Shown piece by piece: positions 1 through 21,331 of a stretch of DNA of 32,000 nt; position 1 is the first letter of the stretch, and every line of letters starts with the position of its first letter. The translations under genes were made by a program, and so were the position numbers. Source of the stretch: Wallemia ichthyophaga EXF-994 (taxonomy: Eukaryota; Fungi; Basidiomycota); NCBI RefSeq assembly GCF_000400465.1, contig NW_008806280.1, positions 90,001 to 122,000 on the forward strand, read 5' to 3'. Below the pieces are notes generated by a model that had not been told where the DNA came from, searched no databases, and saw only the letters and a list, made by a program, of their open reading frames with translations.

Positions 1-885
1 TAGCCAAAGAATAAGATACGCTTTTGCAAGAGAAGAAGTTTCAGTAGGGTGAGTGTTTTGTGTTTGAACTTTAGCACAAGCTCGTGTAGGTTGGTGCCTG
101 TGTTAAGAACAGCCTGGTTAGTGTAATCGAGCAAGCTGTGTTCAAGCGACTGGTGAAATTGGACAAGCAGCTGTCGTTCGCTGAAGTTGCGCTGGTGAAA
201 AAAGGCACGCGTGATGACGCCGAGCTTGTCCCTGTTGAGCGTGAGCGTGTAAGAAGCGAGCAGTCACCAGCAATGCAACCCACCTTATTGGTCCAAAAAC
301 TGGCTTAGTAGTGAGTACCACGATTGCCTTCTGGACAATTGACCTGGTAACATGGCTATCTCTTTCGATCAACTCACTCGCCTTGAGCTGCCGATTGCAA
401 CTAATACCGAAGACGGTGGATTTGCCGAGCTTGCCGTCCTCCGGCGGCTTCAAGTGAAAGTAGGAAAAGTCCTCTTGCGTCATATGTGCGCCGTCAGGGA
501 GAGCGAGGAAAGGGAGAAGACGGGCAAATTCGGAGTCAGTGACGGTATTTGGTGGGTGGCAGAACTCAATAATTGGGCCGAGATTGTGATGGAAGTCTAT
601 GAGTAGAGTTGCGAGGAGTGGATCGTTCTCGCTACGCTGCGATTGTGCGGCAGAAATATCATCGCTAGTTGAGCGTGTAGAATGAGATGAAGGACCTGGC
701 AGTGGCGACGGCAGTGATGGCAGCGTTGCGTGCTTCGTATGCGGTGTATGCTGGGAATGCTCGTACTCGAATGGATTTACATCTTGGTGAAACGGCGTCG
801 GAGTGAGCTTGGATTGAAGTTCCGATAGAGACGCCCGCGGATCTGATGCCCAGGGATCTTGGTCGAATGAGTTTAGGTGGGACAT
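1..885 (-). CDS. AVL9: Late secretory pathway protein Avl9 (DENN-like domain), 3'-truncated by the window edge
   Basis: ATG at 885. Motifs LIDFHHNLGPIIEF, LPFLALPDGAH, FGISCNRQL and VTRSIVQKAIVV. A 52-nt intron at 232-283 (GTGGGT..CAG) joins GPIR to DKLGVITRAFFHQRNF...TLTLLKLLFLQKRILFFG, all typical of the Avl9 family. Confidence 0.9.
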
Positions 886-975
886 GGCCGTGTGTGCGCA
901 AGGAGGTACGTGTGCCTCGAGATTTCCTCCAATTACTGCTGGAATGACACGAAATGTATATTTGTCGCATGAAAT

Positions 976-1869
976 CTAATTTAAAATGATACAGAATCTA
1001 AGAAAGCCGTCGGGAGATGCCATCGTTGACGCCAGCCACGAAATGTCAGCTTCGAGAGGGATAGCTGTGCCGTGAAGAACGGGATAAGCTAGCTGTGGGT
1101 ATTTGGAGCTGTCTGAGGGGAATAGTAAGGGCAACGATGTCGATAAAGCTTGCTGGAGTGTTAACTTTGGCGGAAGAATGTCTTGAATTACAATCTGATC
1201 TGGTAAGATGAATTTGAGCGGGATTGAGCGCGGTTTTGGCGTTTCATTATCATCCATCTCTTTTTCTTTGATTGACAAGGGCAATGGGAGCAATTTGTCC
1301 GCAATTTTGAAGTATTCGTCAATGTCATTCGACTGAATTGAGTGCCACAGCTGCTCAGTTTGATTAGTTTTTAACTGAGTTATGCGCTTAACAGTGCCCC
1401 AGTATATCAGCTGAGATTCCTTCAAACTACCCATGAAGCTCAGTTTGGTGGATTGCAGGTGAGCAGCAGCACTATCAGCAGAATTGGACAAGTGCAGGAT
1501 GAGTTTGAGAGGAGGGGCGTGATTTTTAAGTGGATTATAATTAAACGTGTAATAATCATACGATAGACCAATATTCCAATGCAATTTGAGCTTATCGGGG
1601 ATGTTATTAGCGGTCGTGTTGCTCTCGGGCAAATCAACGACTTCAAACCAAATATCGTCGTCGTTGATACTGTTAAGCTGGTTGGAGCTATGATTTGATT
1701 GCAGGAACGCATATTTCAATTGCTGGTATATGAAAAATGGGTAGGAATTTCTATACGCCGTGAAGTAAACGGTATCTAGCACGCTAAGGCCATCTTTTCT
1801 AACAGAGAGTTCCAAGGAGACGGTAGAATTCCAATTGAGACTCCTAAAGTAATTCAAGTCAGAGGACAT
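976..1869 (-). CDS. ATG5: Autophagy protein 5 (Atg12-conjugation target), intronless, 297 aa
   Basis: Likely start is the Met at 1869 (MSSDLNYFRSLNW). Motifs IWFE, LKLHWNIGLSYD, FMGSLKESQLIYWG, EQLWHSI, RSIPLKF, LHGTAIP and SPDGFLRFCI match the Atg5 pattern. Confidence 0.9.
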   Translation of the reverse strand: MSSDLNYFRSLNWNSTVSLELSVRKDGLSVLDTVYFTAYRNSYPFFIYQQLKYAFLQSNHSSNQLNSINDDDIWFEVVDLPESNTTANNIPDKLKLHWNIGLSYDYYTFNYNPLKNHAPPLKLILHLSNSADSAAAHLQSTKLSFMGSLKESQLIYWGTVKRITQLKTNQTEQLWHSIQSNDIDEYFKIADKLLPLPLSIKEKEMDDNETPKPRSIPLKFILPDQIVIQDILPPKLTLQQALSTSLPLLFPSDSSKYPQLAYPVLHGTAIPLEADISWLASTMASPDGFLRFCIILN

Positions 1870-1939
1870 TTGAATCGTCTGCTCGGTATGAAGATTCAAA
1901 CTAAGTTGAACGGGTAAAAACAAGGCTAGAAGGACTACG

Positions 1940-2200
1940 ATGAAATTATTCAACAAGTTCAACAAGAAGAGGAGTAACAAGAAGACCAAGAAGGGAATAT
2001 CCAATACAGATATCATTCCGCACCTCTCGCCGTTTGATCCTTTCACATATAATCACGATCCATTTGCAAAACTAGACGACAGTAAGCAAGAACGGAGACA
2101 AGTGCAGTACAAGAACAATCACCTCAAGAATCCAATCTATAAGCTACCTTCTATCGACGATATCAGTTTACCAGATTTATCCGACAAAGGAGGCGCTTGA
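1940..2200 (+). CDS. Small Lys-rich hypothetical ORF (86 aa), divergent from ATG5
   Basis: ATG-initiated ORF filling the gap between ATG5 and the next gene's TATA-like region. No recognisable family, and no in-frame splice to the downstream gene was found. Confidence 0.3.
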   Translation: MKLFNKFNKKRSNKKTKKGISNTDIIPHLSPFDPFTYNHDPFAKLDDSKQERRQVQYKNNHLKNPIYKLPSIDDISLPDLSDKGGA

Positions 2201-2280: not shown

Positions 2281-2339
2281 TGAACCTGTAATATACCGAC
2301 AAGACAGTCTAACACTCTTTGTACCATACCACCACCAAT

Positions 2340-5300
2340 ATGCCACAGCCGAATCATCGTACAATACCTTCACAGTCTCTAAACACACCAAAGCCAGCAA
2401 AGAAGGCTAAGAAAGTTGCAGTAAAGCTTCCCAGCCGTGATGGAAGAAGGGTTCTCGACACAGACAATGCCACGGACACGGGCACTGCCACTTCCACGCC
2501 ACCAGTTATATCCACAATACCCACATCTACTTCACATTTACACCAGTCTCCTGACGATAATGTTATTGATATCTTCCTTCCAGGAAAAGACGCTTGGGAC
2601 GCTATCAAGCAGCGTGGAATAACCAATCAGCTATACAAGCTGGGAATACACACCCAGCCTACACTATCTGAGCAGAAATATGACTCAAACTTTGATACCC
2701 CACCTGAAAATGACTTATTATCCTTTAAAATGGATAGGTTCTTTAATGACTCGCTTGTCGATAGCAAGACACCCAATCCAGACAACTCCACTCTCTCTTT
2801 GTCCAATTTCAACACCACAAGCTTATCGCCGGCTTTGTCTTCTCCGTCGGGCTACTTGCAGCACTCCCCACTCTCAAACACAGGCCATTTAAGTATTCCA
2901 CATACTTCAGCTCCAGCTTCAAACGCCTCACCCAACCCATCCTCACTTGCTGATGTCGAAGAAGTCGAGGAAGTGGAAGAGGTAGAAAACGCGGCGGAAA
3001 ACTTGGCTTATAACACAGAGGCAGTTGATAACACAGTGTCGACTGATAATACTCAGCAACAAGATAACAAAGACCAATTAGAGGTGGAGAATCATCTCAA
3101 TAACACCTCTCCAAACACCTCAATCATCCCAGATGAGGCTCCTCAATTGCCCCCACCCTCTTTCCAAGAACTCAGCAGAGGGTTTGGCTATGAGCTTGAC
3201 TATGAAGACGAACAGGCTCAGCTAGCCCAGCTCGAGAAAGAGGAAAGAAATCACAAAAAGTCCATGTCAGGATTTTCTATCAAGTCCGATAGCCAGCAGT
3301 ATGATAATGATGAGGATGTCCAAGACGCAGTGGATGAAAAGGACGACGGGGCTACAGAGGATACCGCCACTGCTCAAGACACTGACGCTGAAGCAGTTGA
3401 AGACATTTTCAAAGCAGAAAGTTTAGACGGTGAGTGCGAGTGTCTCACTACACCAAACACTCCTAACACTTTTCGCAGATAACAACACCAACACTGATAT
3501 TGATGAACAAGCCTTCAATTACGAGCTGTATGAGCTGCAGAGAAAGGACACAGAGGCTGACGAACAAGTGCAGCTTCAGCGCGATCAAGAAGAAAACACC
3601 AAAATACCATCCGCATATCCCAAAAGCGCTCTCAAACCGACTGTTACAGAGTTTGTCCCCGCAGCTCCTGCAGCTCCTTTCAAAGACAGCACCAACGAGT
3701 ACAACTCAGCTTTCAAATTCGATCGGTACTCATTACCAGCGCAATACGACGCACCAAAACAACCTATACCCAATCACATGACCAAACGTCAAAGAGCATC
3801 ATCGCGCGCGACCTCGGGCGAGGGTGATAACTGGTCAGGCTTCGACGTCAACAGTGACGGAGGGGACCTCGACACCTTCTCTAACCCTTCCGATGAAGAG
3901 CGGCTGCTACAGCACCGCCTCAATAGCCGCATGATGTCGAATCATGCTTTACAATTCGGGGGTAAGGAGAATGAGCGTGAGCAGGAGCAGGAGCAGGAGC
4001 AGGAGCAAGATGATGAACACACACTCTCTGCGCCGCTCAACGCACTCAATAGAAAGACGTCGCTCTCTGCTAATGCACCGGTGTTTGAGCCCGGCAACTT
4101 CACTTTCAAGTCTGAGCTGAGTCTGAACCGGAGTGCGCCACCTGAAAGCTCACTGGGGTCGCTTCATAGGACGGAGTCGAAAGAGAGTGAGATGCCTTAT
4201 AAGCGGGGACGCCCTAACCCAAGTGATACCTCGGATGACTGGAAGATTCCATCCACGATCAAGCAGGAAGAGGTCGAGGGCGATGTGTACGATGTCAATG
4301 TCAGTGGTGTGAAGCACTCTGACAGAGAGTGCGAGAGCGTAAACGCTTCGCGCACGAACTTGAGTCTGCAGGATGTGTATCACAAATTGGAGCAGCTATC
4401 TATCAACCTCAAAGCACGCGATGTAGTGACGAGGGACGATCTAAAAGAAGCCATTGAACATGACAGAGGCTTAATAATGGAGGTCTTGTTCCGAAACAGC
4501 TCGTCTGGTGATGTTTTGGCCGCTCTTAAACCACAAATCGCATCACTGAAGCCTGATGAAGACGCAATTGCTACGAGGTTATCAGATTTTGTTAGACCTG
4601 ATATACTGTCGTTGATTAATATGGCGGCTTCAGGTGGGTTGATGTCTTGTCTTATTTCACTCAAGCTCACGCTCACGTCACAGACAAAGAGAAGACGGCA
4701 GATATTATCACAGAACACCTCACAAATTCAGACATATTCACGTCGATCAAGACTGCACTGAGTGACATGGTCAGCAGACACAGTGAGCTTTATGACTCAT
4801 TCCACTCAACACAGACAGAGATTTTCACAAATGCATCCTCGCTGCATGCCAAGCTCGGTGATTTGCCTGACGGGATAACGGCGGCGACGGGTGCGCTCCA
4901 AACTGCGACGGAGAAGCTGAACGCGTACTCATCTCTTCCCGGAGAGCTAAAGGGTATGAGTGAATACGTGAGCGATAATGCAGCGCTTCGCAACGACATC
5001 TCCAAAGCACAATCGCACCATGGCAAGCTGCGCACCGAGAAGGACCGACTGCTTGACAAGCTGCGGGTAGCGGAAGAGGAGCGTGACTCAGCCAAGATAG
5101 AGGCGGATCTATCGCGCCAGTCTAGCCGTAAGATTGAGTCCGATCTCGTCAAGATCGAGGCGACGAATGGCAGTCTGATAGAGAGTCTAAACGGAATGGC
5201 GAACAAGTGCGCGCAGTTTGAGCACCAGTTGGAGGATCTGTTCGACCAGAAGCAGACATGGTACGCAGCTGACCGCGACTACCAGGTGAGGGTGAAGGAG

Positions 5301-5939
5301 CTGGAGATGCAGTTGGAGATGCAGAGCAGGGAGCGTGAGAATAAGATGAGAGCGATTTCGGAGGAGCACGAGCGCATTCAGAATCATGCCGAGGAGCTCG
5401 CCCGTAGCTTACATTCCTCTCATCTCGAAAACACTCGTTTGCACAGCGAGTACGAGGATATGTCGCGAAGCTCCCTCGCTGTCAACCAGGACCTCGCCGC
5501 TAAATGTGGTTTACTTGAGAATCGTAATGCGGAGCTGGAGGATGTGGCTGATGGGGCCAGGGAGTCAGAAGAACAACATCTACAGGCGCATCATGCGGCT
5601 AGCCAACACGTACACGAGCTCGAAGAGAAGGGCGTGCAGGATAAGGCTTTGCTGCAGGAGGCTACTAGCACTATCGAGAGACTTTACGAGGAGATGTCCG
5701 CGACGACGCACGAGATGGCCCATCTTAGGAGGGAAAATGAGGGATTGAAGGGGGGTGCGGGTGTAGATGTGGATGGCAGACGCACGCCCACTAATAAGAA
5801 TTACAAGTCACAAGATGTTCACGCCCCCGTACCCGCTTATAACACACCCGTCTCACCGGCTTTCAGCTCGATATCAAAACTCAGCACTAGCACGGCAGCT
5901 ACCTACCAAGCTGACGATGGATGGTTCTATCCGACGTGA
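2340..5939 (+). CDS. Large disordered/coiled-coil protein (about 1166 aa) with two PAM2-like motifs and a C-terminal DDGWF; candidate Upa2 homolog
   Basis: Exons 2340-3429, 3479-4633 and 4684-5939. Introns GTGAGT..CAG (49 nt) and GTGGGT..CAG (50 nt) join the three ORFs in frame. PAM2-like KSALKPTVTEFVP (3622-3660) and KTSLSANAPVFEPG (4054-4095), a long heptad-rich C-terminal region, and the end YQADDGWFYPT*. Confidence 0.8.
3979..4008 (+). repeat. (GAGCAG)n hexamer repeat encoding an EQ run
   Basis: gagcag x4 followed by gagcaa, within the CDS. Confidence 0.9.
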
Positions 5940-7223: not shown

Positions 7224-9864
7224 ATGGAAATCAAAGAATTAATAGAAGGTATGCATGTTTTATATCTTCTGAATATAAGTAACGCTTTCATAGCCACAGA
7301 GGGCTTCAACTTGCTTTTCAATGATAAGATTGAGGAGTCGACACGCGAGCTATCCAAACACAATAATGCGTTTGGTAAAACTGGATTAGGAATTATTCTC
7401 TTCTTACAAGCTGCGTTGGGTATGGAGGATGGCATGATGGAAAGGGCACAGGATCAACTTCTCCAGGCCGAGAAAGCTGCCGACTCTGCCAAGAGAGAGT
7501 GCAGCAATGCAAAGCACAATAAGACTAGATTCGCTAGCGCTGCTCCTTATGTGTGACTGATCACTCGTACAAAACAGCAACCTAACAGCTCCTCACAGGA
7601 GCTACTTGTAGCTGCGAATGTAATTGGGCAATCTATGACTCAGATTTTAACGGAATCCTCTGTTGAAATGATCAAAGCCATTTACAAAGTTGGTTGATTA
7701 CTCATACACGCCCACCCGCACTAATTTTAGAACAGCTCAACAGATCCTATAAGCTGTACAACAACTCGTTCCTCACAGTCTTCCCTGGTGGCGCTGCGTC
7801 TCTGCCAGACACTCCAATAGCTTCTCCTTCGCTATCGAGACAACAATCCACCCAAACACTCAACAAACCAGCCCCACCAAAGCCACAGAAAAGCTTCCTC
7901 GCAAAGAAGTTTGGTAGCTTCTTAGGCGGGGCTGGTGGTGGCACAAATACCGCTCAAATCACCACTCCTCAACCGCCATCCGATGAAGTTGAGGAATTTG
8001 TCATGTCTGGTGCTTGTTTCGGATTCGGATTGTTCGGTTTGGTATTCTCGCTTATGCCGCCAAAGCTGTAGGTTATTTGTGTAATAGCTCCACTGTATAC
8101 TCACTCCATTAAGGAAGAAGCTAATTAACGTTTTTGGGTTCAAGAGCGATAGGAAGGAGGCCCTCAAGGCGTTAAGTCTGAGTGCTAGCTACAAAGATGT
8201 TCACTCATCCTTCGCTGCACTCACCCTCCTCTTCTACACCTCATCCACACTACTTCTTGCTGGTTGGAATGCTGATTCAGAAAATGACATGCGCATGTTC
8301 GAGAAAATTTTGAAAAGGTGCGTCTCATTTTGAACTACAGTCACTATTGAGACGATTTATCAGTTGTGAAGAAAGGTGAGCGTCGACGGGATACAAAGAT
8401 GTATATTCACATCCACAGATATCCAGACGGCACCCTATGGACGCTCAACAGAGCCAAACTGGAGCGTATAAATGGAAATGCTGACAAGGCCCTTGAAATT
8501 TTGGGTAGTACGCTCAACAAAGATGGCGGCTTCCCTCAGGCTGAGGTAATTATAGTTTTTGAATACGCTTGGCTCCTGCTCGCCGAGAATAGGTGGGTTG
8601 CTTTTGTGTTCTAGGATACGCTAACAAACCAACTAGATACCAAGATTCTGCACAATACTTCCTTCATCTGATGAAACTCAATTCGTGGTCACACGCCACA
8701 TACACTCTCTTGGCAGCTGGCTGTCATTTGTCCCATGCGCAGGAGGTAGACACAGAGGAGAACCACGCCAAAGCGCACGAGGAGTTTATGAAGGCAAGTC
8801 TGCGTGGTGTGGATAGAGAGGGTATATGAGCTGACATGATCTCTAGGTGCCCAGTCTCCTCAACGCGAAGAAACTCGGTGGACGTAATATGCCAATGGAG
8901 GATGTGAGAAGGGGTTTGAATTGTGACTGATCAACTAACCAAATCGCCCACACAGTTTGCACAGCGCAAAATAGCATTCTGGAAGCGTAAGCATGAGCGC
9001 CGTGTCGGTGCATGCGCGAAACAGGGCATTAGTGTCGATCCTGAGCGATGGGATTTGGCCATTAAGGTAATTTGGGATGTTGGTAGGAATACACACACAC
9101 ATACTCACACATACTCCAGATTAGTCCGGCAGATGTGAGTGGAGTTTGTATGGCTGGTCTTCACTTGCAGCTGACGCACGTGGTAGGAAATGGCATGTTT
9201 CTGGAACAGCTATGGGAAGATAACACGTCACGCTGCTATCAAGCACATGGAATCTTTGTGTCAACTCACACCTGCACCTCTGATCGAGACTCACCTAGTC
9301 GACATGACCAAGGCGGAGGGCAGCGCAGGTGCAGGTGCAGGCACAATGGAAGATCTGGACACACTCGACGAGAAGGCTGTAAGATGTCTTCTTCTCGGAA
9401 TTCTCCATCGCGCTATCGGAGAGCTGGCCTTGTCTCGCAGATACCTCGACGAGTGTGTGTCTTACAGAGGGCAGATCACTGACGATACTTGGGCGCCTGC
9501 ATTTGCGGCTTACGAGTTAGCGGTGTTGGAGCTGAACGAATGCGACAGACTGACAGCTAAGAGTAGGTCGGACAGCGGTACACCAGATTCCTCAGCTGCG
9601 TCCTTCTCCACGGCGAGGGAGGGCGAAGATGCAGAGGGTGAGAAGGCTGAGAAGGCTGAGACGGATGAAAAGACAGTCGAACCATCCACCGCAAAGACGT
9701 CCAAGGATATCTGGAAGAGGGGTATCGACGCTAGTGAGAAACACCTCGCTCTGGTTGCCTCAGGAGAGTTTGGGACTACGTACGATCTCGAAGGTCGTCA
9801 AGGCACAAGAATGTATTTACTAAAGGATGAGATACAGACCAAAAAGGCACAGATGGAGTTGTGA
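7224..9864 (+). CDS. IML2: Iml2/TTC39 family TPR-like protein (DUF3808), about 11 short introns
   Basis: Segments EGFNLLFNDKI, GIILFLQAALGME, SGACFGFGLFGLVFSLMPPK, GFKSDRKEAL, YPDGTLWTLNRAK, FEYAWLLL, NSWSHATY, LLLGILHRAIG, WAPAFAAYELAVL and YDLEGR are joined by GT/GC-AG introns. Confidence 0.88.
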
Positions 9865-9923
9865 GGGTGGTAAAACTGCTTTTTTTTGTTGCTCTTGTAC
9901 ACAGTTACGTTTCTTTGCTACTC

Positions 9924-10124
9924 TCAGAAAATACTCCCGCTCTGTTTGTATTTGCTAAACCAAAGAGTGAAAATTGTGAGACACAAGACGAGGATGATGG
10001 AGTTGAGGGATTTGTAGAGCTGCTGGTACGCAGGATTGTGGATTGGGTAGGATTTGTATATTACATGCCATTGTCTGAGCGAGTAGCCGATGGAGAGCGC
10101 TGCGAAGATGTACACGGTGCCCAT
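9924..10124 (-). CDS. Orphan 66-aa membrane microprotein
   Basis: ATG at 10124 with a TATATAAAT box about 40 nt upstream (10164-10172 on the minus strand). Hydrophobic segments VYIFAALSIGYSL and SIILVLCLTIFTLWF. The stop lies 59 bp from the convergent IML2 stop. Confidence 0.5.
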   Translation of the reverse strand: MGTVYIFAALSIGYSLRQWHVIYKSYPIHNPAYQQLYKSLNSIILVLCLTIFTLWFSKYKQSGSIF

Positions 10125-10270
10125 GTTGGGTGTTTGGATGCGAGTGGGGGTGTGGGTTTGTGGATTTATATACACAAAATGCAAATTTTAGCAGCGAGAA
10201 ATGCAATTCATTTAAATTATAGAGTACTCTAGCTAATCTATAGAGACAAAAAAAAAGTGAGTCAGACATA

Positions 10271-11872
10271 TCACAGCGCAACATCAGCCAAGCGCGCAAC
10301 CTCAATAACGCCACCGACGAGATGGAGTGAGCCGCAGACGAGGATGTGTGTGTGTGAGTGTGGATTATTGGTACTATTCACACTCAGGCTCTCACTCCTA
10401 TCGATATAATCCACAGCAGCCTCGATCGACGGTAGTACTTCAACGCAGCCTTTGAATTGGGGGAGGAGGGAGTTCCACGCCGCTTTGAGCTCATGTTGAA
10501 CCTCTAATTCCTGTATAGTGAGTACGTCTACATTCCTAGCCGTGAGATCGCTGGCAAACTCGCCCGACGTGTAGGTCAGATTGGTGCAGAAAATGACCGA
10601 GGTGAAGAGTGTTTCCATGTTCGCGCCCGCTGCGGTGAGGTAGGCAGCGACCACGCCGAGCAGCTCGGTCGGTGACCTGCCCTTAGTGCAGTTAAAGATG
10701 AGGTGAGTGCGAGTGTGTTGTTGTGGCTGCTCCACCTCCAGCTCCCGTTCCCGCCGCGCTCTCACAACCCCGCCGAACCACTGCATGCATGCAGTGAGGC
10801 TGTCAGCGGTATGGCTGCCATCAAGAAACCACGTCGTGCTTGGCCGTCTTGGATCTACCACCGTCTGGCACCTTCCTGGCCACCTAGCCTTTGTGAGACC
10901 GTCGACGAACACCTGCGGAAGACCATTTCTCCAATCGTGCCCCTCTAGCTCACCTTTCCAGCTAGCGAACTTGTTGCTCTTTCCCGCATTCACAAAAGCA
11001 CGCACGACATCGACGGCCAGTCGCGCATTAAGCGCCTGGTGCACACCGGGCAGGCCGAGGGGGAGTGAGAGGGTGTGATTAGCGGGAGCATCGCGTGTGT
11101 CGACTACGCCGAAAGGGGCATTGACGCGCTGAGCACACTCCGCCAGAACGGCCTCGCCATCTTCGGGCTGAGGGACGGTGAGTGCCGCGGCGCCTGCTTT
11201 GTATATCCCCCCTTTATTGAGGGCTATCGCGCGAATAGTCCCGCCTAGCAAAGCCGTGTGGTCGAGACCAAGACTGCTCACAGCTGCTACTGCCGGCGCG
11301 GGGACTATGTTGGTGCAGTCGAGCGACCCCCCAATACCGACTTCGAGGACGGTCGCGTCTACGTCTTCGGCGAGGAACGTGTGGAAAGCTACGAGCGTCA
11401 TGAAGCGGAAGTAAGCGGGTTTGGGGAGAGTGGACGTGGAGTGTGTGTTGTTGACGCTGTCCACGTCGCTCACCTCATCCTCGCCCACGCCATCCAAAGC
11501 CATCCACACGTCAAAAAAGTACTTGGCGAAACGCTCTTCGCTGAGTGGGTGGCCATTGATGCGTATACGCTCGCGGACGGCTACGAGGTGCGGGGAGGTG
11601 TACAGACCCACGCTGGCGTGTGGATTGAGGGACTGGAGGAGGGACGAGACAAAGGCGGCAGTGGAGCCCTTGCCCTTTGTGCCGGTGATGTGAAGGACGT
11701 TGAGTCTGTTGAGATCGCTTGGCGTGTATCCCATCCGGCGTAGATAGACCTCCATGTCGCGGAGCGTGTGTCCACGACGAGCCTCGCGTGCGCAAGTGGA
11801 AGCGGCGATAGTAGCAGCATTGCTCTGTAGGCTGTTGAGGCATTCGATGGCGTGTTGGTAAGTCTTCTTCAT
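10271..11872 (-). CDS. MET7: Folylpolyglutamate synthase (Met7-type), intronless
   Basis: Motifs AIECLNSLQSN, HITGTKGKGST (P-loop), GLYTSPHL, RERIRING, LEVGIGG..DCTN, LGLDHT, WPGRCQ, FLDGSHT and LVCGSLHLVGG. First ATG at 11872. Confidence 0.93.
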   Translation of the reverse strand: MKKTYQHAIECLNSLQSNAATIAASTCAREARRGHTLRDMEVYLRRMGYTPSDLNRLNVLHITGTKGKGSTAAFVSSLLQSLNPHASVGLYTSPHLVAVRERIRINGHPLSEERFAKYFFDVWMALDGVGEDEVSDVDSVNNTHSTSTLPKPAYFRFMTLVAFHTFLAEDVDATVLEVGIGGSLDCTNIVPAPAVAAVSSLGLDHTALLGGTIRAIALNKGGIYKAGAAALTVPQPEDGEAVLAECAQRVNAPFGVVDTRDAPANHTLSLPLGLPGVHQALNARLAVDVVRAFVNAGKSNKFASWKGELEGHDWRNGLPQVFVDGLTKARWPGRCQTVVDPRRPSTTWFLDGSHTADSLTACMQWFGGVVRARRERELEVEQPQQHTRTHLIFNCTKGRSPTELLGVVAAYLTAAGANMETLFTSVIFCTNLTYTSGEFASDLTARNVDVLTIQELEVQHELKAAWNSLLPQFKGCVEVLPSIEAAVDYIDRSESLSVNSTNNPHSHTHILVCGSLHLVGGVIEVARLADVAL

Positions 11873-11956
11873 GGAGTGATATTGATGGTGCTGGACGAAC
11901 AAGTCAACAACTAACAACCATCAACCAATCAACTAAATAACCAATCAACCATCAGA
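11873..11956. promoter_or_regulatory. 84-bp bidirectional promoter region with two CCAAT boxes
   Basis: Lies between the divergent FPGS and RIB4 ATGs. CCAAT at 11925-11929 and 11941-11945 inside a repeated AACCA(A)TC pattern. Confidence 0.45.
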
Positions 11957-12568
11957 ATGGCCCCCCACTCAATGCCGCAGCCACCCGCTTCTCTCTCCGG
12001 CAGCAATCTCAAGATCGGCATCGTGCACACCCGCTGGAATTCGGAGGTTGTCGATGCACTCGTCCAAGGCACACGCAATCGTCTTCTCTCACTCGGAGTT
12101 AAGCCTGAGAATGTAATTATCCAGCAGATCGCTGGTAGCTGGGAATTACCGATTGCGACCAAGAAGATGATTCTCGCTGGTAGAGTTCAGCAAGGGCATT
12201 CACAGAACCTGCTCTCGGGTTTAGATCCACTCAGCTCTCCAGAGGCTCCGGGCGCATCAACAGACACAGCTTCAGCTACTAAAGTCGGCGAGTTCGACGC
12301 TGTAGTATCTATCGGTGTCCTCGTGAAAGGCAGCACACAACACTTTGAATACATCGCTGGAGCTGCGACTGACGGCCTCATGCGCGTCAGTCTCGATGAG
12401 AACACCCCCGTCGTATTCGGCGTGCTCACTTGCAATAACGAGGAACAGGCTAGAAGCAGAGCGGGTTTGGTGCCAGGTGGCCTCGAAAATCACGGTCCTA
12501 GTTGGGCAGACTCGGCTGTTGAACTCGCTGGTCTATCGGCAAAGTGGAGTAAAGGGGTGTTTGAATGA
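11957..12568 (+). CDS. RIB4: 6,7-dimethyl-8-ribityllumazine synthase, intronless
   Basis: Motifs IGIVHTRWN, GSWELP, FDAVVSIGVLVKGSTQHFEYI, PVVFGVLTC and NHG, with the low-complexity insertion seen in filamentous-fungal enzymes. Confidence 0.96.
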   Translation: MAPHSMPQPPASLSGSNLKIGIVHTRWNSEVVDALVQGTRNRLLSLGVKPENVIIQQIAGSWELPIATKKMILAGRVQQGHSQNLLSGLDPLSSPEAPGASTDTASATKVGEFDAVVSIGVLVKGSTQHFEYIAGAATDGLMRVSLDENTPVVFGVLTCNNEEQARSRAGLVPGGLENHGPSWADSAVELAGLSAKWSKGVFE

Positions 12569-12757
12569 GTAGTTAGTTTGATAAAGTATACACGCTTAAT
12601 GAATGTGGATATTACAATGGATCGATCCCGTCGAGTTGTCGAATTCGTATAAAGTGGTTCAATGAGTGAATATGCTGCTATCTGGTAGCGCTGTGGTTTT
12701 CCATGACTTTCTATTCTTCTTGATTGTCTATTCTGCTTCTTCTGACCTCTCTAGCCT

Positions 12758-13121
12758 CTAACTATGCGCCCTTCTAGGGAGGTGGAAGAGAAGTGAAGGT
12801 GGACGGTGGAGTGTTTTTACGGGACTGGTGAGGCGTGGGGAGTGGTCGTTGAGTGGAACGCAGAAAGACTGCTGCTTGGTCAAATAACCGTCAAACTCAA
12901 AAGAATTGCTCTGTGAGGTTGAAGAGGACGTTGAGCAAGTTGAAGCAGACGAAGTCGATGAGACTGATGAGGATGATCTCGATCTTTTCTGTCTTTTGGA
13001 GTGTCAGTGCCGTTCCTGCTACTCAAGCCTTGACTTACACTACAGGACGCCCAGGACGCCCAGCTTTGAAAGGGTCAAGGTCTTGGAAAAGACTGTCCGT
13101 CTTGGCTTCCGTAAGCTTCAT
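12758..13121 (-). CDS. Tentative Ser-rich hypothetical protein (about 105 aa, one intron)
   Basis: A consensus 46-nt intron at 12993-13038 (GTAAGT..CTGAC..AAG) joins MKLTEAK...RPVV to QKRSRSSSS...RRAHS* in frame. The 5' end may extend further. Confidence 0.35.
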
Positions 13122-13530
13122 CTGGGCTGATTATCTAACACTCCACGTCGACGTCGGTAGGGAGCAAGTCTTGTCGATCGAGTTGTCCAGACTGCGCACG
13201 GATGTCAGGCGGGGGCGAGACAACTCTAATTAAGAATATTTTTTAGGGTAAATGGGGATGGGCCATGTTTGACTAGGTGCATTGAAATCGTTCAACGGAA
13301 TTTATGCGTTTGTTGTACATGTGTTATTTATATCGATGTGAAAATTTGTCAGTCCTGACTGTGCAAAGTGGGAAATGAGAGTAGAATAAGTGGGAGATTG
13401 CTAGTATTGCCAAGTGAGTCAATTAAGACAAATGAGCCAGCCATTTGAGTTGAAAGTGTATGCCAGAGTGGAGATATAAACCAATGGAGCCAATGAGCTG
13501 GGTTATAAGCCATATTTGATATTTGGTAAA

Positions 13531-13833
13531 TCAATAGGACCACTGTGAGCCTGCAGAGTGATCGCTATCGAATGAACTTGTGCTTGTTGTGCTTAATGTG
13601 GACGATGTACTTGTAAGTGAGCTGCTTCGTTGTCTGTTTGAAGCGGCTGAAGCGATACAAGACAATGAATCAGTCCTGCTGAAGGTGCTGAGCGTGTCGA
13701 TATTACTATCACTCCCCCTCAAAACAGCAATTGGCAACGGCTTTGGCAGCGTGTACTTGGATGAACTACGGGAGGGTAAGGGAATGTTATTTGGGATCAG
13801 CTTCAGTGGCGTTGGTGGTTGTCTACGTGGCAT
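13531..13833 (-). CDS. Hypothetical Pro/Ser-rich protein (100 aa)
   Basis: ATG at 13833, sequence MPRRQPPTPLKLIP...KYTLPKPLP..., divergent from TAP42 with a 65-bp gap. Confidence 0.55.
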   Translation of the reverse strand: MPRRQPPTPLKLIPNNIPLPSRSSSKYTLPKPLPIAVLRGSDSNIDTLSTFSRTDSLSCIASAASNRQRSSSLTSTSSTLSTTSTSSFDSDHSAGSQWSY

Positions 13834-13898
13834 TTCAGCGAGTTTAACGACCTGCGTTTTGTTTATCTTTATATCCTGTTGGTGGTTTCGCTTCTCCA

Positions 13899-15005
13899 AT
13901 GACTTGCACAATCCCAACAAAGGAAATTTTAAAAGAAATTATTTCAAGTTATGAATCTGGGGAGAGTGGAGACGAGAATATATTGGATAAAGTCAACTCC
14001 ATCTTGTTTAGACTATCTGCAACTGCGAATACTTCCGATACACACGAGCATCACAGCGAACTCAGTTTAAATAGGTTGAGATATCTTATAGTCTATTATC
14101 TTCATCCAGAATTCATCTACAGTTCTAAATTTGGCAGTGTGGATTTCAGACAATCGAATCTATCGAAATGCCTCAATCTATACACTCAATTCACAGAATT
14201 GTTAGATTCAATTGGTTTTGATGGTATCACTATACACGGTGACTCCAAAGATCCTTCCACTCAGCGTGATTTAAAGATTCAGCGTTTTAAACAGCACAAA
14301 CGGTTGGAATCTGAGGTTTTGGAGTATAAAGAGTTGTTAGAAGATAAGCCTGATAGTGGCTTGTTTCATACCACCTTTAATTCATCTTCTCCCGCTCAGT
14401 CCACCAACCACAAGGACAGTGACGACGACGACGATGACGACGACGATATCCTCCGCGAATACCTCATCAGACTCCTTAAATACCTCTATTCGCTATCGCA
14501 ATCTCAAATCCATTCTATCCATGCTGAATTAGACCTCCTCAGCAACGTCAACAGCAACAGCACAACCGACACACGCACACGCACACAAACCCCTGCAAAC
14601 GATTCGACATGGAGATTGGACAGTGCAGTTAATGCACCCGCCAACAACCTCCTCGACAAAGAAGGCAGACCTACGCGACCATTCACGATAATGCCGCGCG
14701 GTACACACACTACACGACAGCAGATGGCAGATGGCGTGTTTCAACCCAGCCACCGTCTTCCTACAATGACCATTGACGAGTATCTCCAAGACGAGCAGGC
14801 TCGGGGGAATGTTATACAGGGGGGTGGACCTGCGAGTGAGAATCAACCAACTAGCAAGGAACAGCTCCAGCTAGACACTGAGCTCGATGGCACTCTCTTT
14901 GCTCAGCGTGCTCAGGATCAGCAGCGCGCTGACACGGAGAATTGGGCAAGGTATACCGAGGAGGTGGAGAAGGGAAGTGGCAATACTATGGCCAATAATG
15001 GGTAG
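13899..15005 (+). CDS. TAP42: PP2A-associated protein Tap42/alpha4 (IGBP1), intronless
   Basis: Motifs RDLKIQRFK, IHSIHAELDLL, LLDKEGRPTRPFTI, VFQPSHRLPTMTIDEYL and W..Y......GSGNTM at the C-terminus. Confidence 0.93.
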   Translation: MTCTIPTKEILKEIISSYESGESGDENILDKVNSILFRLSATANTSDTHEHHSELSLNRLRYLIVYYLHPEFIYSSKFGSVDFRQSNLSKCLNLYTQFTELLDSIGFDGITIHGDSKDPSTQRDLKIQRFKQHKRLESEVLEYKELLEDKPDSGLFHTTFNSSSPAQSTNHKDSDDDDDDDDDILREYLIRLLKYLYSLSQSQIHSIHAELDLLSNVNSNSTTDTRTRTQTPANDSTWRLDSAVNAPANNLLDKEGRPTRPFTIMPRGTHTTRQQMADGVFQPSHRLPTMTIDEYLQDEQARGNVIQGGGPASENQPTSKEQLQLDTELDGTLFAQRAQDQQRADTENWARYTEEVEKGSGNTMANNG

Positions 15006-15042
15006 AAGAAGTTATTTATAATGGACAATCGATCATCGATCA

Positions 15043-15231
15043 TTAGTGTATCGTTTGTGTGCTTTGTGCAATTGAAAATCTTTCATCGAGTTGAGTGCAG
15101 TGCAGTATGAGTTGGCACTCAGTCTCAGTCTCAGTCTCAGTCTCAGTTTTTATCTGTATGTTGTAGACTTGCTGCTCAAAATGCCTCGCAAATGGTAAAA
15201 TCCACTCTATTCTCTGTCTCAAACGATTCAT
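15043..15231 (-). CDS. Possible 62-aa micro-ORF placed back-to-back with the GSKIP-like gene
   Basis: ATG-initiated, fills almost the whole TAP42-GSKIP gap, and carries an in-frame hexamer repeat. No family recognised. Confidence 0.25.
   Translation of the reverse strand: MNRLRQRIEWILPFARHFEQQVYNIQIKTETETETETECQLILHCTQLDERFSIAQSTQTIH
15118..15147. repeat. (CTCAGT)5 hexamer microsatellite
   Basis: Five perfect units. On the minus strand they encode TETETE within ORF 15043-15231. Confidence 0.95.
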
Positions 15232-15570
15232 ATGTCAGAAACGCTGCACAACGAACTGTTACTTGCATTGAGTGAACAGTATAACCAGTCTCTAATATCC
15301 TCCTACACACCGATCGATACATGCACAGCGACAGTCGAGCTACTCGAGGGTGTCCAAGTGCGTGTACACATAACCCAATTTGGATATAGCCTGGGGGGCG
15401 GTGGTAGTAGTATTGGCAGTGATAGCAGCAGAAGCAGTAACACCAACACTACCAATCAATCAGAAGACTTAGAAGGCCTCTTACGCGGATGCAGTCCAGC
15501 ATTCAACCAACGCACCACAGCAATTCTGTTGGATAAACTCGATAAATTGGCTAAAGTACAACATAAATAA
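15232..15570 (+). CDS. GSKIP-domain (DUF727-like) protein, 112 aa
   Basis: Pattern ATVELLEG...ITQFGY...EDLEGLLRGCSPAF.....LLDKLDKL parallels the GSKIP C-terminal ETVYSLLDTLSPAY...LLQRLEAL (recalled motif). Confidence 0.7.
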   Translation: MSETLHNELLLALSEQYNQSLISSYTPIDTCTATVELLEGVQVRVHITQFGYSLGGGGSSIGSDSSRSSNTNTTNQSEDLEGLLRGCSPAFNQRTTAILLDKLDKLAKVQHK

Positions 15571-15598
15571 AAAGCTTTCAAGTCATCACGTTATCAGG

Positions 15599-16506
15599 TC
15601 AAAATCCACCCAGCTCCCTCTCTAGCTCTGCCAATGCTTCGTTCTCCAGTGCATCCCTGTCTGCGTCCATCCCGCCCAGTTCATCATCTGGCGGTATGTC
15701 GTCTGGAATGTCATCGTGCGTGTCAGCCTTGTTACGCGGTGGCGGTGGCGGTGGTGATCGCGGTGGCGATGGCGATCTAAATAGGGCATCTTGTTGGTGC
15801 TTCTCTGATGCATTCTCATTGTCGTGTACCTTGTCGTGATCGTTCTCTCCCTCCCGCTCCAGCTCCACACCATCCACACCACCGACACCACCGACACCAC
15901 CGACACCCATTTCACCCCTTCTCAAAGCATCCTTCCACCCCTTTAAAGCAGCCTCCATACGACGCTGATGGCAAATCTTCTCCGTGCGTTCTACGACATC
16001 GCCGAACTGCAATTTAGGGAAAAGTTTATGTGTCCAAAGGTGGTATCTGGCGAGCAGCCTACGCAAATCGGCCCATTCGTGCCCCTTACCTGCGAATTTC
16101 CAGTGAGCGCTATCGTGCATGAGCGCAGGTAAACCGTGTGTGCCGAGGAGTCTGTTCGTTGGTGAGTGAGTCACTCAGACAGTACTCCCACTCCCACTCA
16201 CCTCTCTGCATCTATCTTGGCCACCACGCGTCTAGGTTTGCCTTGAACCGCGCCGTCGTCGTCGTCTTCTCCCCCGGCCGGCTGCTTGGCTGTGGCGAGG
16301 TCGTCGCCTATCGACTCGAATATATCGTCGACTGTTTGCTTGTGTGCGCTGTGGTCGTCGTGTGCTCTTTCATCCTCTCGATCGTTATCCACCTGTGTAT
16401 GCGTGCGCTTACGCGTGCTCGCCGGCGCAACAACGCGCTCCTCGGACATTTCGCGTGCAGGTCTGCGAGTCAGGTTAGGCGGTGCGTCAAAGTCGATGAA
16501 AGACAT
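15599..16506 (-). CDS. CSM3: Replication fork protection complex subunit Csm3/Swi3/Tipin
   Basis: Intron 16152-16201 joins KPRRVVAKIDAER to LLGTHGLPALM..GKGHEWADL..LL..YHLWTHKLFPKLQF..VVERTEKICH, the Swi3 domain. ATG at 16506. Confidence 0.92.
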
Positions 16507-16565
16507 GATCGTGTGTGTAGTGTGTAGTGTGTTGGGAGTGAACGGTGAACACACCACGCACACCA

Positions 16566-17132: not shown

Positions 17133-17155
17133 ATGAATAAATGAATAAATGAATA
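17126..17155 (+). repeat. (TGAATAAA)3 tandem repeat at the BET3 stop, giving three AATAAA hexamers
   Basis: tgaataaa x3 followed by tgaata. The first unit contains the BET3 stop codon. Confidence 0.85.
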
Positions 17156-17204
17156 TAGAAATGAATTTATACCTTGGATATAAGATTGGATATATGGTTT
17201 GCAT

Positions 17205-17500
17205 TTAAACAACCACACAACATCCACCGCCTTGTGGTGCGTATGGGTCTTCTTTCTTATCGACAGGGCCCCAGACAGAGGGGATCTGAGGGGAGTGTGT
17301 TAGTGTGACTGTCATGAACTACAGCCTCCATAACTTACCAAATAATCCTTGGTGGAATTACAAAACCTAATTAATCCCTGACTCGCTTCGCTGACATTGA
17401 TCCGTGGACGCGCATAATCATCTTTAAGTCTCTGGTTGTGTTCGTTGAGGCGTCTAAGCTTTAATTCGCTCATACTTTGCTTGTGAGGTCTGCCTGTCAT
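17205..17500 (-). CDS. Heterotrimeric G-protein gamma subunit (Ste18-like)
   Basis: [46 protein letters not shown], then intron 17286-17338, then IPSVWGP...DPYAP..GCCVVV*, ending in a CCAAX lipidation motif. Confidence 0.95.
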
Positions 17501-21299: not shown

Positions 21300-21331
21300 G
21301 ACGGTCACAGACAAAGAGATTAAATTTACAC

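What the first reader, a model, noticed from the sequence alone, without database searches (positions are those of the whole stretch)
2340..5939. Candidate Upa2-type endosomal mRNA-transport scaffold with a GWF tail instead of GWW
Seen in the sequence: once two consensus introns are removed, three ORFs join into a protein of about 1166 aa. It has an acidic disordered N-half, two PAM2-like motifs (LKPTVTEFVP at 3631-3660, LSANAPVFEP at 4063-4092), a long C-terminal coiled coil, and the terminus DDGWFYPT* (5913-5939). Established knowledge: Ustilago maydis Upa2, a core factor of Rrm4/Pab1 endosomal mRNA transport, combines multiple PAM2 motifs, a coiled coil and a C-terminal GWW motif needed for endosome attachment. 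Inference: this is a compacted Upa2 ortholog with fewer PAM2 motifs and a W-to-F change in the targeting motif. That would imply endosome-coupled mRNA transport in this lineage and give a natural variant for probing the GWW code. Automated pipelines would probably label it hypothetical or myosin-like.
Basis: partly seen in the sequence, partly recalled or inferred. Interest (0 to 1): 0.75.

Follow-up and report, generated by a model that had tools for sequence, protein, structure and literature searches.

The report
Compact Wallemia orthologue of Upa2 scaffold
This gene of the salt-loving fungus Wallemia ichthyophaga, labelled "hypothetical" in databases, is a half-size relative of Upa2, the scaffold protein that helps the corn-smut fungus carry mRNAs on moving endosomes; this is a useful annotation, not a new kind of system.

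Summary
Removing two short GT..AG introns joins three ORFs into a 1166-aa protein. It is identical to the public model J056_004154 (XP_009267630.1, "hypothetical protein") of Wallemia ichthyophaga EXF-994. Both PAM2-like motifs, the long C-terminal helix and the DDGWFYPT tail sit at the stated coordinates and are conserved in all Wallemia relatives found.

A Wallemia profile finds only one family among 1.8 billion proteins. Its members are about 1850-2120-aa basidiomycete proteins with central PAM2 motifs, a C-terminal coiled coil and a terminal [DE]GW[WY]x. The reverse profile hits the window protein at E 1e-27, and hhalign gives E 8e-46. Conserved blocks are colinear from N-terminus to tail. 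Published primers and residue numbers for U. maydis upa2 place that gene in the same family.

Caveats:
- Neither Wallemia motif reaches the Pfam PAM2 threshold.
- GWF is not unique, because GWY tails occur in 16 of 58 tails examined.
- The U. maydis protein itself could not be fetched.
- Whether Wallemia has Rrm4, Upa1 or endosomal mRNA transport could not be tested.

Verdict: a new, compact member of a known family, of moderate to low interest.

The parts
2340..3429 (+). Exon 1 (aa 1 to the first base of codon 364)
   Evidence: The first ATG of the ORF is at 2340. The model is identical to the public one, J056_004154.
3430..3478 (+). Intron 1, 49 nt, GTGAGT...CTAAC...CAG
   Evidence: Read directly from the sequence. 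Removing it restores the reading frame.
3479..4633 (+). Exon 2
4634..4683 (+). Intron 2, 50 nt, GTGGGT...CAG. It lies inside the most conserved block of the family (AAS|DKEK).
   Evidence: P0003 is a model that reads through this intron and shows an insertion at this point.
4684..5939 (+). Exon 3, including the stop codon at 5937-5939
2409..2432 (+). KKVAVKLP (aa 24-31), a basic block shared with the family (KKVxVxLP)
2565..2651 (+). N-terminal conserved block VIDIFLPGKDAWDAIKQRGITNQLYKLGI (aa 76-104), with a predicted helix at aa 83-100
   Evidence: It aligns to the family consensus VDVFLPGKxAWxxxKxxxIEEKLEKLG. AF2 pLDDT is about 80.
3159..3266 (+). SFQELSRGFGYELDYEDE block followed by a helix (aa 274-309). 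It is a candidate counterpart of the Upa2 effector-domain region.
   Evidence: It aligns to the family block RPDFxRGFGLDIPEEEE, and the helix is at aa 288-309. The link to the effector domain is an inference from position in the similar-length Tulasnella protein. The effector domain is mapped to aa 339-599 in U. maydis.
3625..3660 (+). PAM2-like motif 1, SALKPTVTEFVP (aa 413-424), specific to the Wallemia lineage
   Evidence: It fits the consensus at L3, V7, E9, F10 and P12. It is conserved in all Wallemia relatives and lies in a disordered region. It gets no Pfam PAM2 hit.
3829..3924 (+). NWSGFDVNSDGGDLDTFSNPSDEERLLQHRL block (aa 481-512)
   Evidence: It aligns to the family block EWSNPSDEERARQxR. 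Among Wallemia species, 75% of columns are invariant.
3934..3963 (+). Degenerate PAM2 remnant MSNHALQFGG (aa 516-525)
   Evidence: It is positionally equivalent to the family motif LNPxAKPFVFG and to U. maydis PAM2-2, LNPDAKEFKFGG. The gapless register is my own inference.
4057..4110 (+). PAM2-like motif 2 with flank, TSLSANAPVFEPGNFTFK (aa 557-574)
   Evidence: HMMER aligns it to the family motif LNvaApEFkPtgFtF. That motif is a Pfam PF07145 hit in Tulasnella P0010 at aa 969-982. U. maydis PAM2-3 has the same PGxFTF flank.
4201..4212 (+). KRGR basic patch (aa 605-608)
   Evidence: It is conserved in Wallemia and is positionally equivalent to the family block QGREKRQRR.
4366..4928 (+). Helical domain, aa 660-830, spanning intron 2. 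It contains the family hallmark FVRPDILSLINMAASDKEKTADII (aa 734-757, nt 4588-4709).
   Evidence: hhalign gives E 7.8e-46. P737, D749, K750, T753, A754 and I757 are invariant across 18 to 27 sequences. The model shows helices here.
4980..5720 (+). Long C-terminal helix or coiled coil, aa 848-1094. It includes AQSHHGKLRTEKDRLLDKLRVAEEERD (HGKLRTEKD is nt 5019-5045).
   Evidence: AF2 predicts a single helix with pLDDT 80-90. The heptad score is high. It aligns to the family block ARGAHGQVRVEKDxLxEKLxxVEAERD.
5844..5936 (+). Conserved tail TPVSPAFSSISKLSTSTAATYQADDGWFYPT (aa 1136-1166). GWFY is nt 5919-5930.
   Evidence: It aligns to the family tail SPTPSxVSxAPTxGxDGWWS. G1161 and W1162 are nearly invariant.

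Best explanation
The gene (J056_004154) encodes the Wallemia orthologue of the basidiomycete Upa2 family, in a version about half the usual length.

Shown here:
- It is homologous over its whole length, in the same order of blocks, to the roughly 1850-2120-aa proteins of Agaricomycotina. One Puccinia fragment also matches.
- Those proteins carry central PAM2 motifs, a C-terminal coiled coil and a terminal [DE]GW[WY]x.
- The Wallemia protein has a mostly disordered, acidic N-terminal half with short conserved islands.
- It has a helical domain around the motif (A/F)V(K/R)P...L(I/V)(D/N)(L/M)A(A)SDK(K/E)(E/K)TA.
- It has a predicted helix of about 250 residues, and a conserved tail ending DDGWFY plus two residues.

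Inferred by analogy with the experiments on U. maydis Upa2:
- The long helix dimerises the protein.
[quoted passage not shown] A dimer would then gather several Pab1-bound mRNAs.
- The GW-aromatic tail binds a still unidentified protein of the transport mRNP and so places the scaffold on Rrm4/Upa1-positive endosomes.
- The conserved N-terminal islands, especially the RGFG-acidic block, correspond to the unmapped effector function.
For: Homology from Wallemia outwards. The Wallemia profile was searched against 1.84 billion representative proteins and gave 91 hits at E<=1e-3. Every hit inspected belongs to this one family. The named hits are Agaricomycotina 'hypothetical proteins', plus one Puccinia striiformis fragment.

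Homology in reverse. An HMM built from 19 Agaricomycotina proteins hits the window protein at E 9.9e-28 with Z = 1.84e9. Six colinear segments run from aa 3 to 1163. The PAM2 motif aligns to PAM2 and DDGWF aligns to DDGWW. hhalign gives 100% probability and E 7.8e-46.

PAM2. The positional orthologue of motif 2 is above the Pfam gathering threshold for PAM2 in Tulasnella, Hydnum and Calocera proteins.

Tail. G-W-aromatic is present in all 58 genuine tails examined: 37 W, 16 Y and 5 F.

Link to U. maydis Upa2. The published description is 2121 aa, four PAM2 motifs, a dimerising coiled coil at 1712-2121, GWW at 2118-2120, and orthologues in Agaricomycotina, Pucciniomycotina and Ustilaginomycotina. 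Peptides translated from the published upa2 primers are PAM2-2 (L863) LNPDAKEFKFGG, PAM2-3 (L925) LNVGAAPFTPGLFTF, HVPSIR at 1211-1216, AAVKPN near 1415 and EGGWWS*. The Tulasnella protein has LNPLARPFVF at 919, LNVAAPEFKP at 971, NVLSIS at 1233, AVKP at 1510 and GWWM at 2116.

Structure. The predicted disorder and helices fit a scaffold built from short linear motifs plus a coiled coil.
Against: - The U. maydis Upa2 sequence, and the orthologues listed in Table S7 of the paper, were never retrieved. The last link therefore rests on the literature and on short peptides deduced from primers.
- Neither Wallemia motif is detected by the Pfam PAM2 model, even at E<=10. Asn4 is replaced by Lys or Ser, and motif 2 lacks Glu9.
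- The literal GWW motif is absent.
- W. ichthyophaga grows as multicellular clumps. By my own knowledge it does not form long hyphae, the cell type in which the transport machinery matters in U. maydis.
- Presence of Rrm4 and Upa1 in Wallemia was not tested.
- About 950 residues found in other members are missing. These include the third central PAM2 and the DFKHPVSTNTVPAGLFKAL...VPSIS segment.
Confidence: 0.8

Rival explanations
1. The protein is a true homologue of the family, but in Wallemia it no longer works in endosomal mRNA transport. It would be a general cytoplasmic Pab1/mRNP scaffold, or have another role. The shortened architecture and the GWF tail would reflect relaxed or changed partner binding.
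For: About 45% of the usual length is lost, including one central PAM2 and a conserved segment. The PAM2 motifs are degenerate and fall below the Pfam threshold. W. ichthyophaga forms clumps rather than long hyphae (plus my own knowledge). Müller et al. describe a C. neoformans Upa2-like protein that lacks GWW in a species without a proper Rrm4. This shows that the machinery can decay in basidiomycetes.
Against: The tail, both motifs and the N-terminal islands are strongly conserved across Wallemia lineages that are only 41-57% identical overall. This argues for continued selection on the same interaction surfaces. G-W-aromatic is kept, and Tyr replaces Trp in many Agaricomycetes. Hyphal Wallemia species (W. 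mellicola, W. hederae) carry the same compact form.
Confidence: 0.15
2. The Agaricomycotina/Wallemia family found here is not the Upa2 family of Jankowski et al. It would be a different large protein with PAM2 motifs and a coiled coil that happens to end in GWW.
For: No listed Upa2 accession was matched directly. Three word-index searches never returned a Ustilago protein or any Table S7 species.
Against: Five independent peptides deduced from U. maydis upa2 primers match family landmarks in the same order and at similar positions. The published architecture, length and terminal GWW plus one residue are the same. The word-index tool appears to restrict candidates by length and by shared words, so its silence carries little weight.
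Confidence: 0.04
3. The protein is an unrelated coiled-coil protein (myosin-like, Uso1-like or similar), and its PAM2-like strings and GWF ending are chance.
For: Pfam finds no domain. One relative carries the UniRef name 'Transport protein USO1'.
Against: There is no hit to any PDB chain, including myosins and tropomyosins, at E<=0.01. The profile search found no unrelated coiled-coil proteins. The homology includes regions outside the coiled coil, namely the N-terminus, PAM2, the helical domain and the tail.
Confidence: 0.01

Closest known systems
Ustilago maydis Upa2 (UMAG_10350, XP_011391917.1; Jankowski et al. 2019)
   Same: Both have a disordered N-terminal and central part carrying PAM2-type motifs, a conserved helical region, a long C-terminal coiled coil, and a terminal acidic-G-W-aromatic motif within the last few residues. 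The landmarks are in the same order.
   Different: The Wallemia protein is 1166 aa against 2121 aa. It has two consensus-like PAM2 motifs plus a remnant, against four. It has no PAM2 at the extreme N-terminus. The tail is GWF-Y plus two residues instead of GWW plus one. Function, partners and localisation are untested.
Agaricomycotina Upa2 orthologues (for example Tulasnella KAG8900984.1, Pluteus TFK76630.1, Coniophora XP_007763137.1, Calocera KZT61864.1). All are annotated as hypothetical.
   Same: Homology is significant in both directions (E 1e-22 and 1e-27; hhalign 8e-46). The shared blocks are KKxxVxLP, LPGKxAW...KLG, RGFG-acidic, NPSDEER, PAM2 with its PGxFTF flank, a basic patch, AVKP...ASDKxETA, HGxxRxEKD...ERD, and the tail.
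   Different: Wallemia lacks about 150 N-terminal residues, the third central PAM2, the DFKHPVSTNTVPAGLFKAL...VPSIS segment, about 150 residues between the ASDK block and the coiled coil, and about 150 residues of coiled coil. It has its own extra PAM2-like motif upstream of NPSDEER. Overall identity is about 20%.
Other PAM2 adaptor proteins that bind the MLLE domain of PABP (Upa1, Ataxin-2/Pbp1, PAIP1/2, eRF3, GW182/TNRC6)
   Same: They use short L-x-x-x-A-x-x-F-x-P motifs in disordered regions, presumably docking the same MLLE pocket through the Leu and Phe residues.
   Different: There is no homology outside the motif. The Wallemia motifs fall below the Pfam PAM2 threshold. Binding was not tested.
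C-terminal GWW micro-domain of bacterial RNase E, which binds PNPase (cited by Jankowski et al. as a precedent)
   Same: It is a terminal G-W-aromatic peptide used as a protein-protein docking element.
   Different: It is an unrelated protein from another kingdom. This is an analogy only.

Membership tests
Upa2 family (basidiomycete scaffold of endosomal mRNA transport) | Significant reciprocal sequence homology to recognised family members from Agaricomycotina and Pucciniomycotina | tested here: met
   The profile search gave 91 hits, all from this family. The reverse HMM gave E 9.9e-28 with colinear segments. hhalign gave E 7.8e-46.
Upa2 family | Direct homology to U. maydis UMAG_10350 itself, as best reciprocal hit | not testable with these tools
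   The sequence could not be retrieved. Only primer-derived peptides and published residue numbers are available, and these agree with the family landmarks.
Upa2 family | Several PAM2 motifs in a disordered central region | tested here: inconclusive
   Two conserved motifs fit L-x-x-x-[AV]-x-x-F-x-P and lie in predicted disorder. Motif 2 aligns to a Pfam-positive PAM2 in relatives. Neither Wallemia motif is found by Pfam PF07145.
Upa2 family | C-terminal coiled-coil (dimerisation) region | tested here: met
   There is a single predicted helix at aa 848-1094 with pLDDT 80-90. The heptad score is high. The region aligns to the family coiled coil. Dimerisation itself was not tested.
Upa2 family | GWW motif at the very C-terminus | tested here: inconclusive
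   The literal GWW is absent. The homologous position reads DDGWFY plus two residues in four Wallemia species and DDGWYYES in a fifth lineage. Among 58 tails, the third position is W in 37, Y in 16 and F in 5. The conserved feature therefore appears to be G-W-aromatic.
Upa2 family | N-terminal effector domain (aa 339-599 in U. maydis) | not testable with these tools
   No U. maydis sequence is available. The conserved RGFG-acidic block is at aa 280 in Wallemia and at aa 525 in the 2119-aa Tulasnella protein. That position would fall inside the mapped interval, but this is an inference from position only.
Upa2 family | Co-occurrence with Rrm4 (RRMs plus MLLE) and Upa1 (FYVE plus PAM2L) in the genome | not testable with these tools
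No paper in the library links Wallemia with Rrm4.
Upa2 family | mRNA-dependent shuttling on Rrm4-positive endosomes, and binding of the Pab1 MLLE domain | not testable with these tools
   These are experimental properties.
Pfam PAM2 (PF07145) | Score at or above the gathering threshold of 20 bits | tested here: not met
   There was no hit for the whole protein or for 36-aa peptides at E<=10, and none for W. hederae or W. mellicola.

The most novel reading that the evidence does not exclude
The Wallemia protein is a naturally minimised Upa2. On this reading, the roughly 1150 residues it keeps define the functional core of the family. That core would be the N-terminal LPGKxAW helix, the RGFG-acidic block, NPSDEER, one ancestral PAM2 with its PGxFTF flank, the AVKP...ASDKxETA helical domain, about 250 residues of coiled coil, and a G-W-aromatic tail. 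The RGFG-acidic block would be the still unmapped effector element. The endosomal docking code would be 'acidic-G-W-aromatic' rather than GWW. The conserved FNY (aa 376-378) and WFY (tail) strings with acidic flanks might even contact Rrm4-type MLLE domains in the way PAM2L motifs do.
Probability: 0.3. Interest if true: 0.5.

Novelty: new member of a known kind. Interest (0 to 1): 0.33.

Why it matters
The finding gives a functional hypothesis to a gene annotated as hypothetical in every Wallemia genome. It also extends the Upa2 family to Wallemiomycetes, a deep branch of Basidiomycota that the published surveys held here do not mention.

Its practical value is comparative. The half-size protein shows which blocks of a 2000-residue, mostly disordered scaffold survive strong compaction. 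The census of tails shows that the third position of the "GWW" motif tolerates Trp, Tyr or Phe. Both points narrow the search for the unknown partners of the effector domain and of the tail.

The finding does not reveal a new mechanism. Conservation of Upa2 across basidiomycetes was already reported.

Tried and rejected
- Pfam scan of the whole protein and of four short segments. No PAM2 or other domain was found.
- phmmer of the two motif peptides, and a Wallemia profile, against PDB sequences. Nothing was found.
- Word-index homologue search with the single protein. It returned only Wallemia.
- Word-index search with a 280-aa block alignment. It returned only fragments shorter than 500 aa, so the tool seems to limit candidate length relative to the query.
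- Word-index search with 19 full-length proteins. It returned only 28 Agaricomycetes and no Ustilago or Table S7 species.
- Scan of metagenome contigs with a 22-nt stretch of a published U. maydis upa2 primer, in the hope of recovering the gene. The single hit is a bacterial contig encoding phosphofructokinase and a GGDEF/EAL protein, so it is a chance match.
- Synteny. The Avl9-ATG5 neighbours are kept between W. ichthyophaga and W. mellicola but not in Pluteus, so synteny gives no help with orthology.
- Structure comparison was not run. The model has pTM 0.29, and its only confident part is one long helix, which would give meaningless matches.
- The primer-derived reading of U. maydis PAM2-1 and PAM2-4 was set aside. 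The printed primer sequences do not give a consistent frame or the L-to-F spacing of seven residues.
Full report
**What is there**

The window is nuclear DNA of a fungus with short introns. ORFs at 2319-3482, 3430-4761 and 4647-5939 on the + strand join after removal of two introns. Intron 1 is 3430-3478 (49 nt, GTGAGT...CTAAC...CAG). Intron 2 is 4634-4683 (50 nt, GTGGGT...CAG). The coding sequence is 3501 nt and encodes 1166 aa. The product is identical to XP_009267630.1/EOR01368.1, "hypothetical protein J056_004154" of Wallemia ichthyophaga EXF-994. Other strains carry a 1164-aa allele that is one Glu-Gln unit shorter.

Neighbouring genes are ordinary housekeeping genes: Avl9, ATG5, a folylpolyglutamate-synthase-like gene, TAP42, mitochondrial IF2, WDR55 and MCM7. 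The Avl9-ATG5 neighbours are shared with W. mellicola.

**Is it more than chance?**

The relaxed PAM2 pattern L...[AV]..F.P occurs twice. Two or more occurrences arose in only 1 of 20,000 shuffles, though the pattern was chosen after seeing the motifs. Conservation is more telling. Between W. ichthyophaga, W. hederae and W. mellicola the proteins are 48-57% identical overall. Invariant columns make up 75% of motif 1, 88% of motif 2 with its flank, 75% of the NWSGF...FGG block and 72% of the tail. The linkers between them score 0-39%. A more distant Wallemia-like organism is known only from metagenome assemblies and is 41-46% identical. It keeps LKPTVPEFVP and LSAKAPAFKP and ends in DDGWYYES.

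**Anatomy**

- Residues 1-400 have net charge -45 and are rich in D, E, S, T, N and P.
- An AlphaFold2 model built on a 27-sequence alignment has mean pLDDT 50 and pTM 0.29. It predicts disorder (pLDDT below 50) for aa 1-78, 112-287, 309-499, 511-658 and 1100-1157.
- It predicts short confident helices at aa 83-100 and 288-309, a set of helices at aa 660-830, and one uninterrupted helix at aa 848-1094 with pLDDT 80-90.
- Both PAM2-like motifs therefore lie in disordered segments, as short linear motifs should. The C-terminal third is a coiled-coil-type stalk followed by a flexible tail of about 70 residues.

**Relatives**

- Pfam finds no domain, and PDB sequences give no match.
- A profile of the Wallemia proteins was searched against 1.84 billion representative proteins. 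It gave 91 hits at E<=1e-3 and 42 at E<=1e-10.
- Apart from Wallemia fragments, the hits are full-length proteins of about 1850-2120 aa, or fragments of them. They come from Agaricomycotina (Tulasnella, Serendipita, Rhizoctonia, Botryobasidium, Calocera, Heliocybe, Pluteus, Auriscalpium, Coniophora, Fistulina, Suillus, Hohenbuehelia and others), plus one fragment from Puccinia striiformis.
- Nearly all are called "hypothetical protein". No unrelated coiled-coil protein appeared.
- In the reverse direction, an HMM built from 19 full-length Agaricomycotina proteins, with no Wallemia sequence, hits the window protein at E 9.9e-28 for a database of 1.84 billion. Six colinear segments cover aa 3-1163.
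- hhalign of the two alignments gives 100% probability and E 7.8e-46.

**Shared blocks, in order (Wallemia / family consensus)**

- KKVAVKLP / KKVxVxLP.
- VIDIFLPGKDAWDAIKQRGITNQLYKLG / VDVFLPGKxAWxxxKxxxIEEKLEKLG.
- SFQELSRGFGYELDYEDE / RPDFxRGFGLDIPEEEE.
- TFSNPSDEERLLQHRL / EWSNPSDEERARQxR.
- MSNHALQFGG / LNPxAKPFVFG.
- LSANAPVFEPGNFTFK / LNxAAPEFKPTGFTFR.
- YKRGRPNPS / QGREKRQRR.
- FVRPDILSLINMAASDKEKTADII / AVKPHISQLIDLASDKRETAGLIV.
- AQSHHGKLRTEKDRLLDKLRVAEEERD / ARGAHGQVRVEKDxLxEKLxxVEAERD.
- SPAFSSISKLSTSTAATYQADDGWFY / SPTPSxVSxAPTxGxDGWWS.

**Is that family Upa2?**

Jankowski et al. describe U. maydis Upa2 as a 2121-aa protein. It has one N-terminal and three central PAM2 motifs, an effector region at aa 339-599, and a dimerising coiled coil at aa 1712-2121. 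GWW lies at aa 2118-2120 and is needed for endosomal shuttling. The last 163 aa suffice for shuttling, and the PAM2 motifs are dispensable. Orthologues are reported in other basidiomycetes. Müller et al. report orthologues in Ustilagino-, Puccinio- and Agaricomycotina, and loss in Malassezia and Cryptococcus along with Rrm4.

I could not retrieve the U. maydis protein or any accession from the paper's Table S7. The supplement, however, prints the upa2 primers and the mutated residue numbers. Translating the primers gives these peptides:

- the C-terminus EGGWWS*, from three primers that agree;
- AAVKPN at the 1414/1415 construct boundary;
- HVPSIR|WGDRRT at aa 1211-1222;
- PAM2-2 (L863, F870) LNPDAKEFKFGG;
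- PAM2-3 (L925, F932) LNVGAAPFTPGLFTF.

The 2119-aa Tulasnella member has LNPLARPFVF at 919, LNVAAPEFKP at 971, a third PAM2 at 1079 (1051 in U. maydis), NVLSIS at 1233, the invariant AVKP at 1510 and GWWM at 2116. Five landmarks occur in the same order and at similar positions, including the family's hallmark AVKP and the PGxFTF flank of one PAM2. This makes it very likely that this is the Upa2 family. I put the residual doubt at about 5%.

**The PAM2 motifs**

- Motif 2 (aa 559-568) is the positional orthologue of the family motif LNxAAPEFKP. That motif passes the Pfam PAM2 threshold in Tulasnella (28 bits at aa 969-982), Hydnum and Calocera.
- Motif 1 (aa 415-424) lies upstream of the NPSDEER block, where other members have no PAM2, so it is a feature of the Wallemia lineage.
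- The family's first central PAM2 (LNPxAKPFVFG, which is U. maydis PAM2-2) survives in Wallemia only as MSNHALQFGG (aa 516-525). This stretch is invariant within Wallemia, but Leu is replaced by Met and the terminal Pro/Phe is lost.
- The third central PAM2 is absent.
- No Wallemia motif is recognised by the Pfam model. The Leu and Phe that were mutated to abolish Pab1 binding in U. maydis are kept in motifs 1 and 2.
- Binding to Pab1 is plausible but not shown.

**The tail**

The GWY tails come from Rhizoctonia/Ceratobasidium, Suillus, Fistulina, Hohenbuehelia, Termitomyces and others. It is GWF in 5, all from Wallemia. The divergent Wallemia-like lineage, with DDGWYYES, is one of the 16 GWY tails. 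Gly and Trp are nearly invariant, and the preceding residues are acidic. The conserved code therefore looks like acidic-G-W-aromatic. In Wallemia-type proteins the next residue is an invariant Tyr, followed by two variable residues. Most other members have a single residue after the motif. The W-to-F change is real, but it is one of several natural variants.

**What was lost**

Compared with the roughly 2000-aa members, Wallemia lacks:

- about 150 residues before the KKxxVKLP block;
- most of the segment between the ancestral PAM2 and the helical domain, about 500 residues reduced to about 100, including DFKHPVSTNTVPAGLFKAL and VPSIS;
- about 150 residues between the ASDK block and the HGxxRxEKD block;
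- about 150 residues of coiled coil.

**Most likely mechanism**

By homology with the U. maydis experiments, the protein would work as follows:

- It would be a dimeric scaffold, dimerised through aa 848-1094.
- Its disordered arms would present PAM2-type motifs to the MLLE domain of Pab1.
- Its terminal GW-aromatic peptide would dock an unidentified protein of Rrm4/Upa1 transport mRNPs on endosomes.
- The conserved N-terminal islands would supply the effector function.

Only the homology and the architecture are shown here. Every binding and localisation step is inferred.

The main reservation concerns biology, not sequence. W. ichthyophaga grows as multicellular clumps, and I could not test whether Wallemia has Rrm4 and Upa1. 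The strong conservation of the interaction motifs across Wallemia lineages, including hyphal species, argues that the partners still exist.

**Novelty and verdict**

No paper in the library links Wallemia with Rrm4 or with endosomal mRNA transport, and the published surveys held here do not mention Wallemia. The gene is a new, unusually compact member of a known family, in a lineage where one would expect it. It is useful for annotation and as a natural deletion series for Upa2. It is not surprising to a specialist. Interest is 0.33.

Noticed in passing
window 3979-4007: A perfect (GAGCAG) x 4.8 microsatellite encodes the (EQ)n run at about aa 531-540. W. ichthyophaga strains differ by one unit, giving 1164-aa and 1166-aa alleles.
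   Followed up: partly
window 3511-3528 (aa 375-380, AFNYEL): An F-x-Y string in an acidic context is invariant in all Wallemia relatives, including the divergent one (HVFNYEQE). It resembles the FxY core, flanked by acidic residues, of the PAM2-like motifs that bind Rrm4 MLLE3 (Devan et al. 2024). The protein has only two other [FW]xY strings. They lie in the RGFGYEL block and in the GWFY tail, and both are conserved among Wallemia species. The significance is unknown.
   Followed up: partly
window 142-2046 (- strand): Avl9 (DENN-like transport protein) and ATG5 lie immediately upstream and are transcribed divergently from the candidate. The same arrangement occurs in W. mellicola (L003) but not in Pluteus cervinus (L002).
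   Followed up: yes
window 9000-28200: The other genes are ordinary housekeeping genes. They are a folylpolyglutamate synthase-like gene (10271-11917 -), TAP42 (13899-15005 +), a GRF zinc-finger protein (17585-18388 -), mitochondrial IF2 (19455-21314 -), WDR55 (23092-24045 +), MCM7 (24695-26644 +) and a WD40 protein (26749-28197 -). Exon structures were not worked out.
   Followed up: partly
relatives P0007, P0008, P0009 (metagenome assemblies; ENA/Logan): An unnamed Wallemia-like organism seen in many samples carries the same gene, split into three called ORFs. This is probably because its introns were not modelled. It is 41-46% identical to the known Wallemia species and its tail is DDGWYYES.
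   Followed up: partly
relatives P0102/P0103 (Rhizoctonia solani) and P0037 (Hohenbuehelia grisea): Some family members carry misleading public names: 'pyridine nucleotide-disulfide oxidoreductase domain protein' (at 2296 aa the longest member of its cluster, so possibly a fused gene model; I did not check this) and 'Transport protein USO1'. The whole family is otherwise unannotated as Upa2.
   Followed up: no
L001 (metagenome contig Ga0209800_10000025): A 22-nt stretch of a U. maydis upa2 primer matches a bacterial contig by chance. The match lies inside a GGDEF/EAL response-regulator gene. It is irrelevant to the finding.
   Followed up: yes
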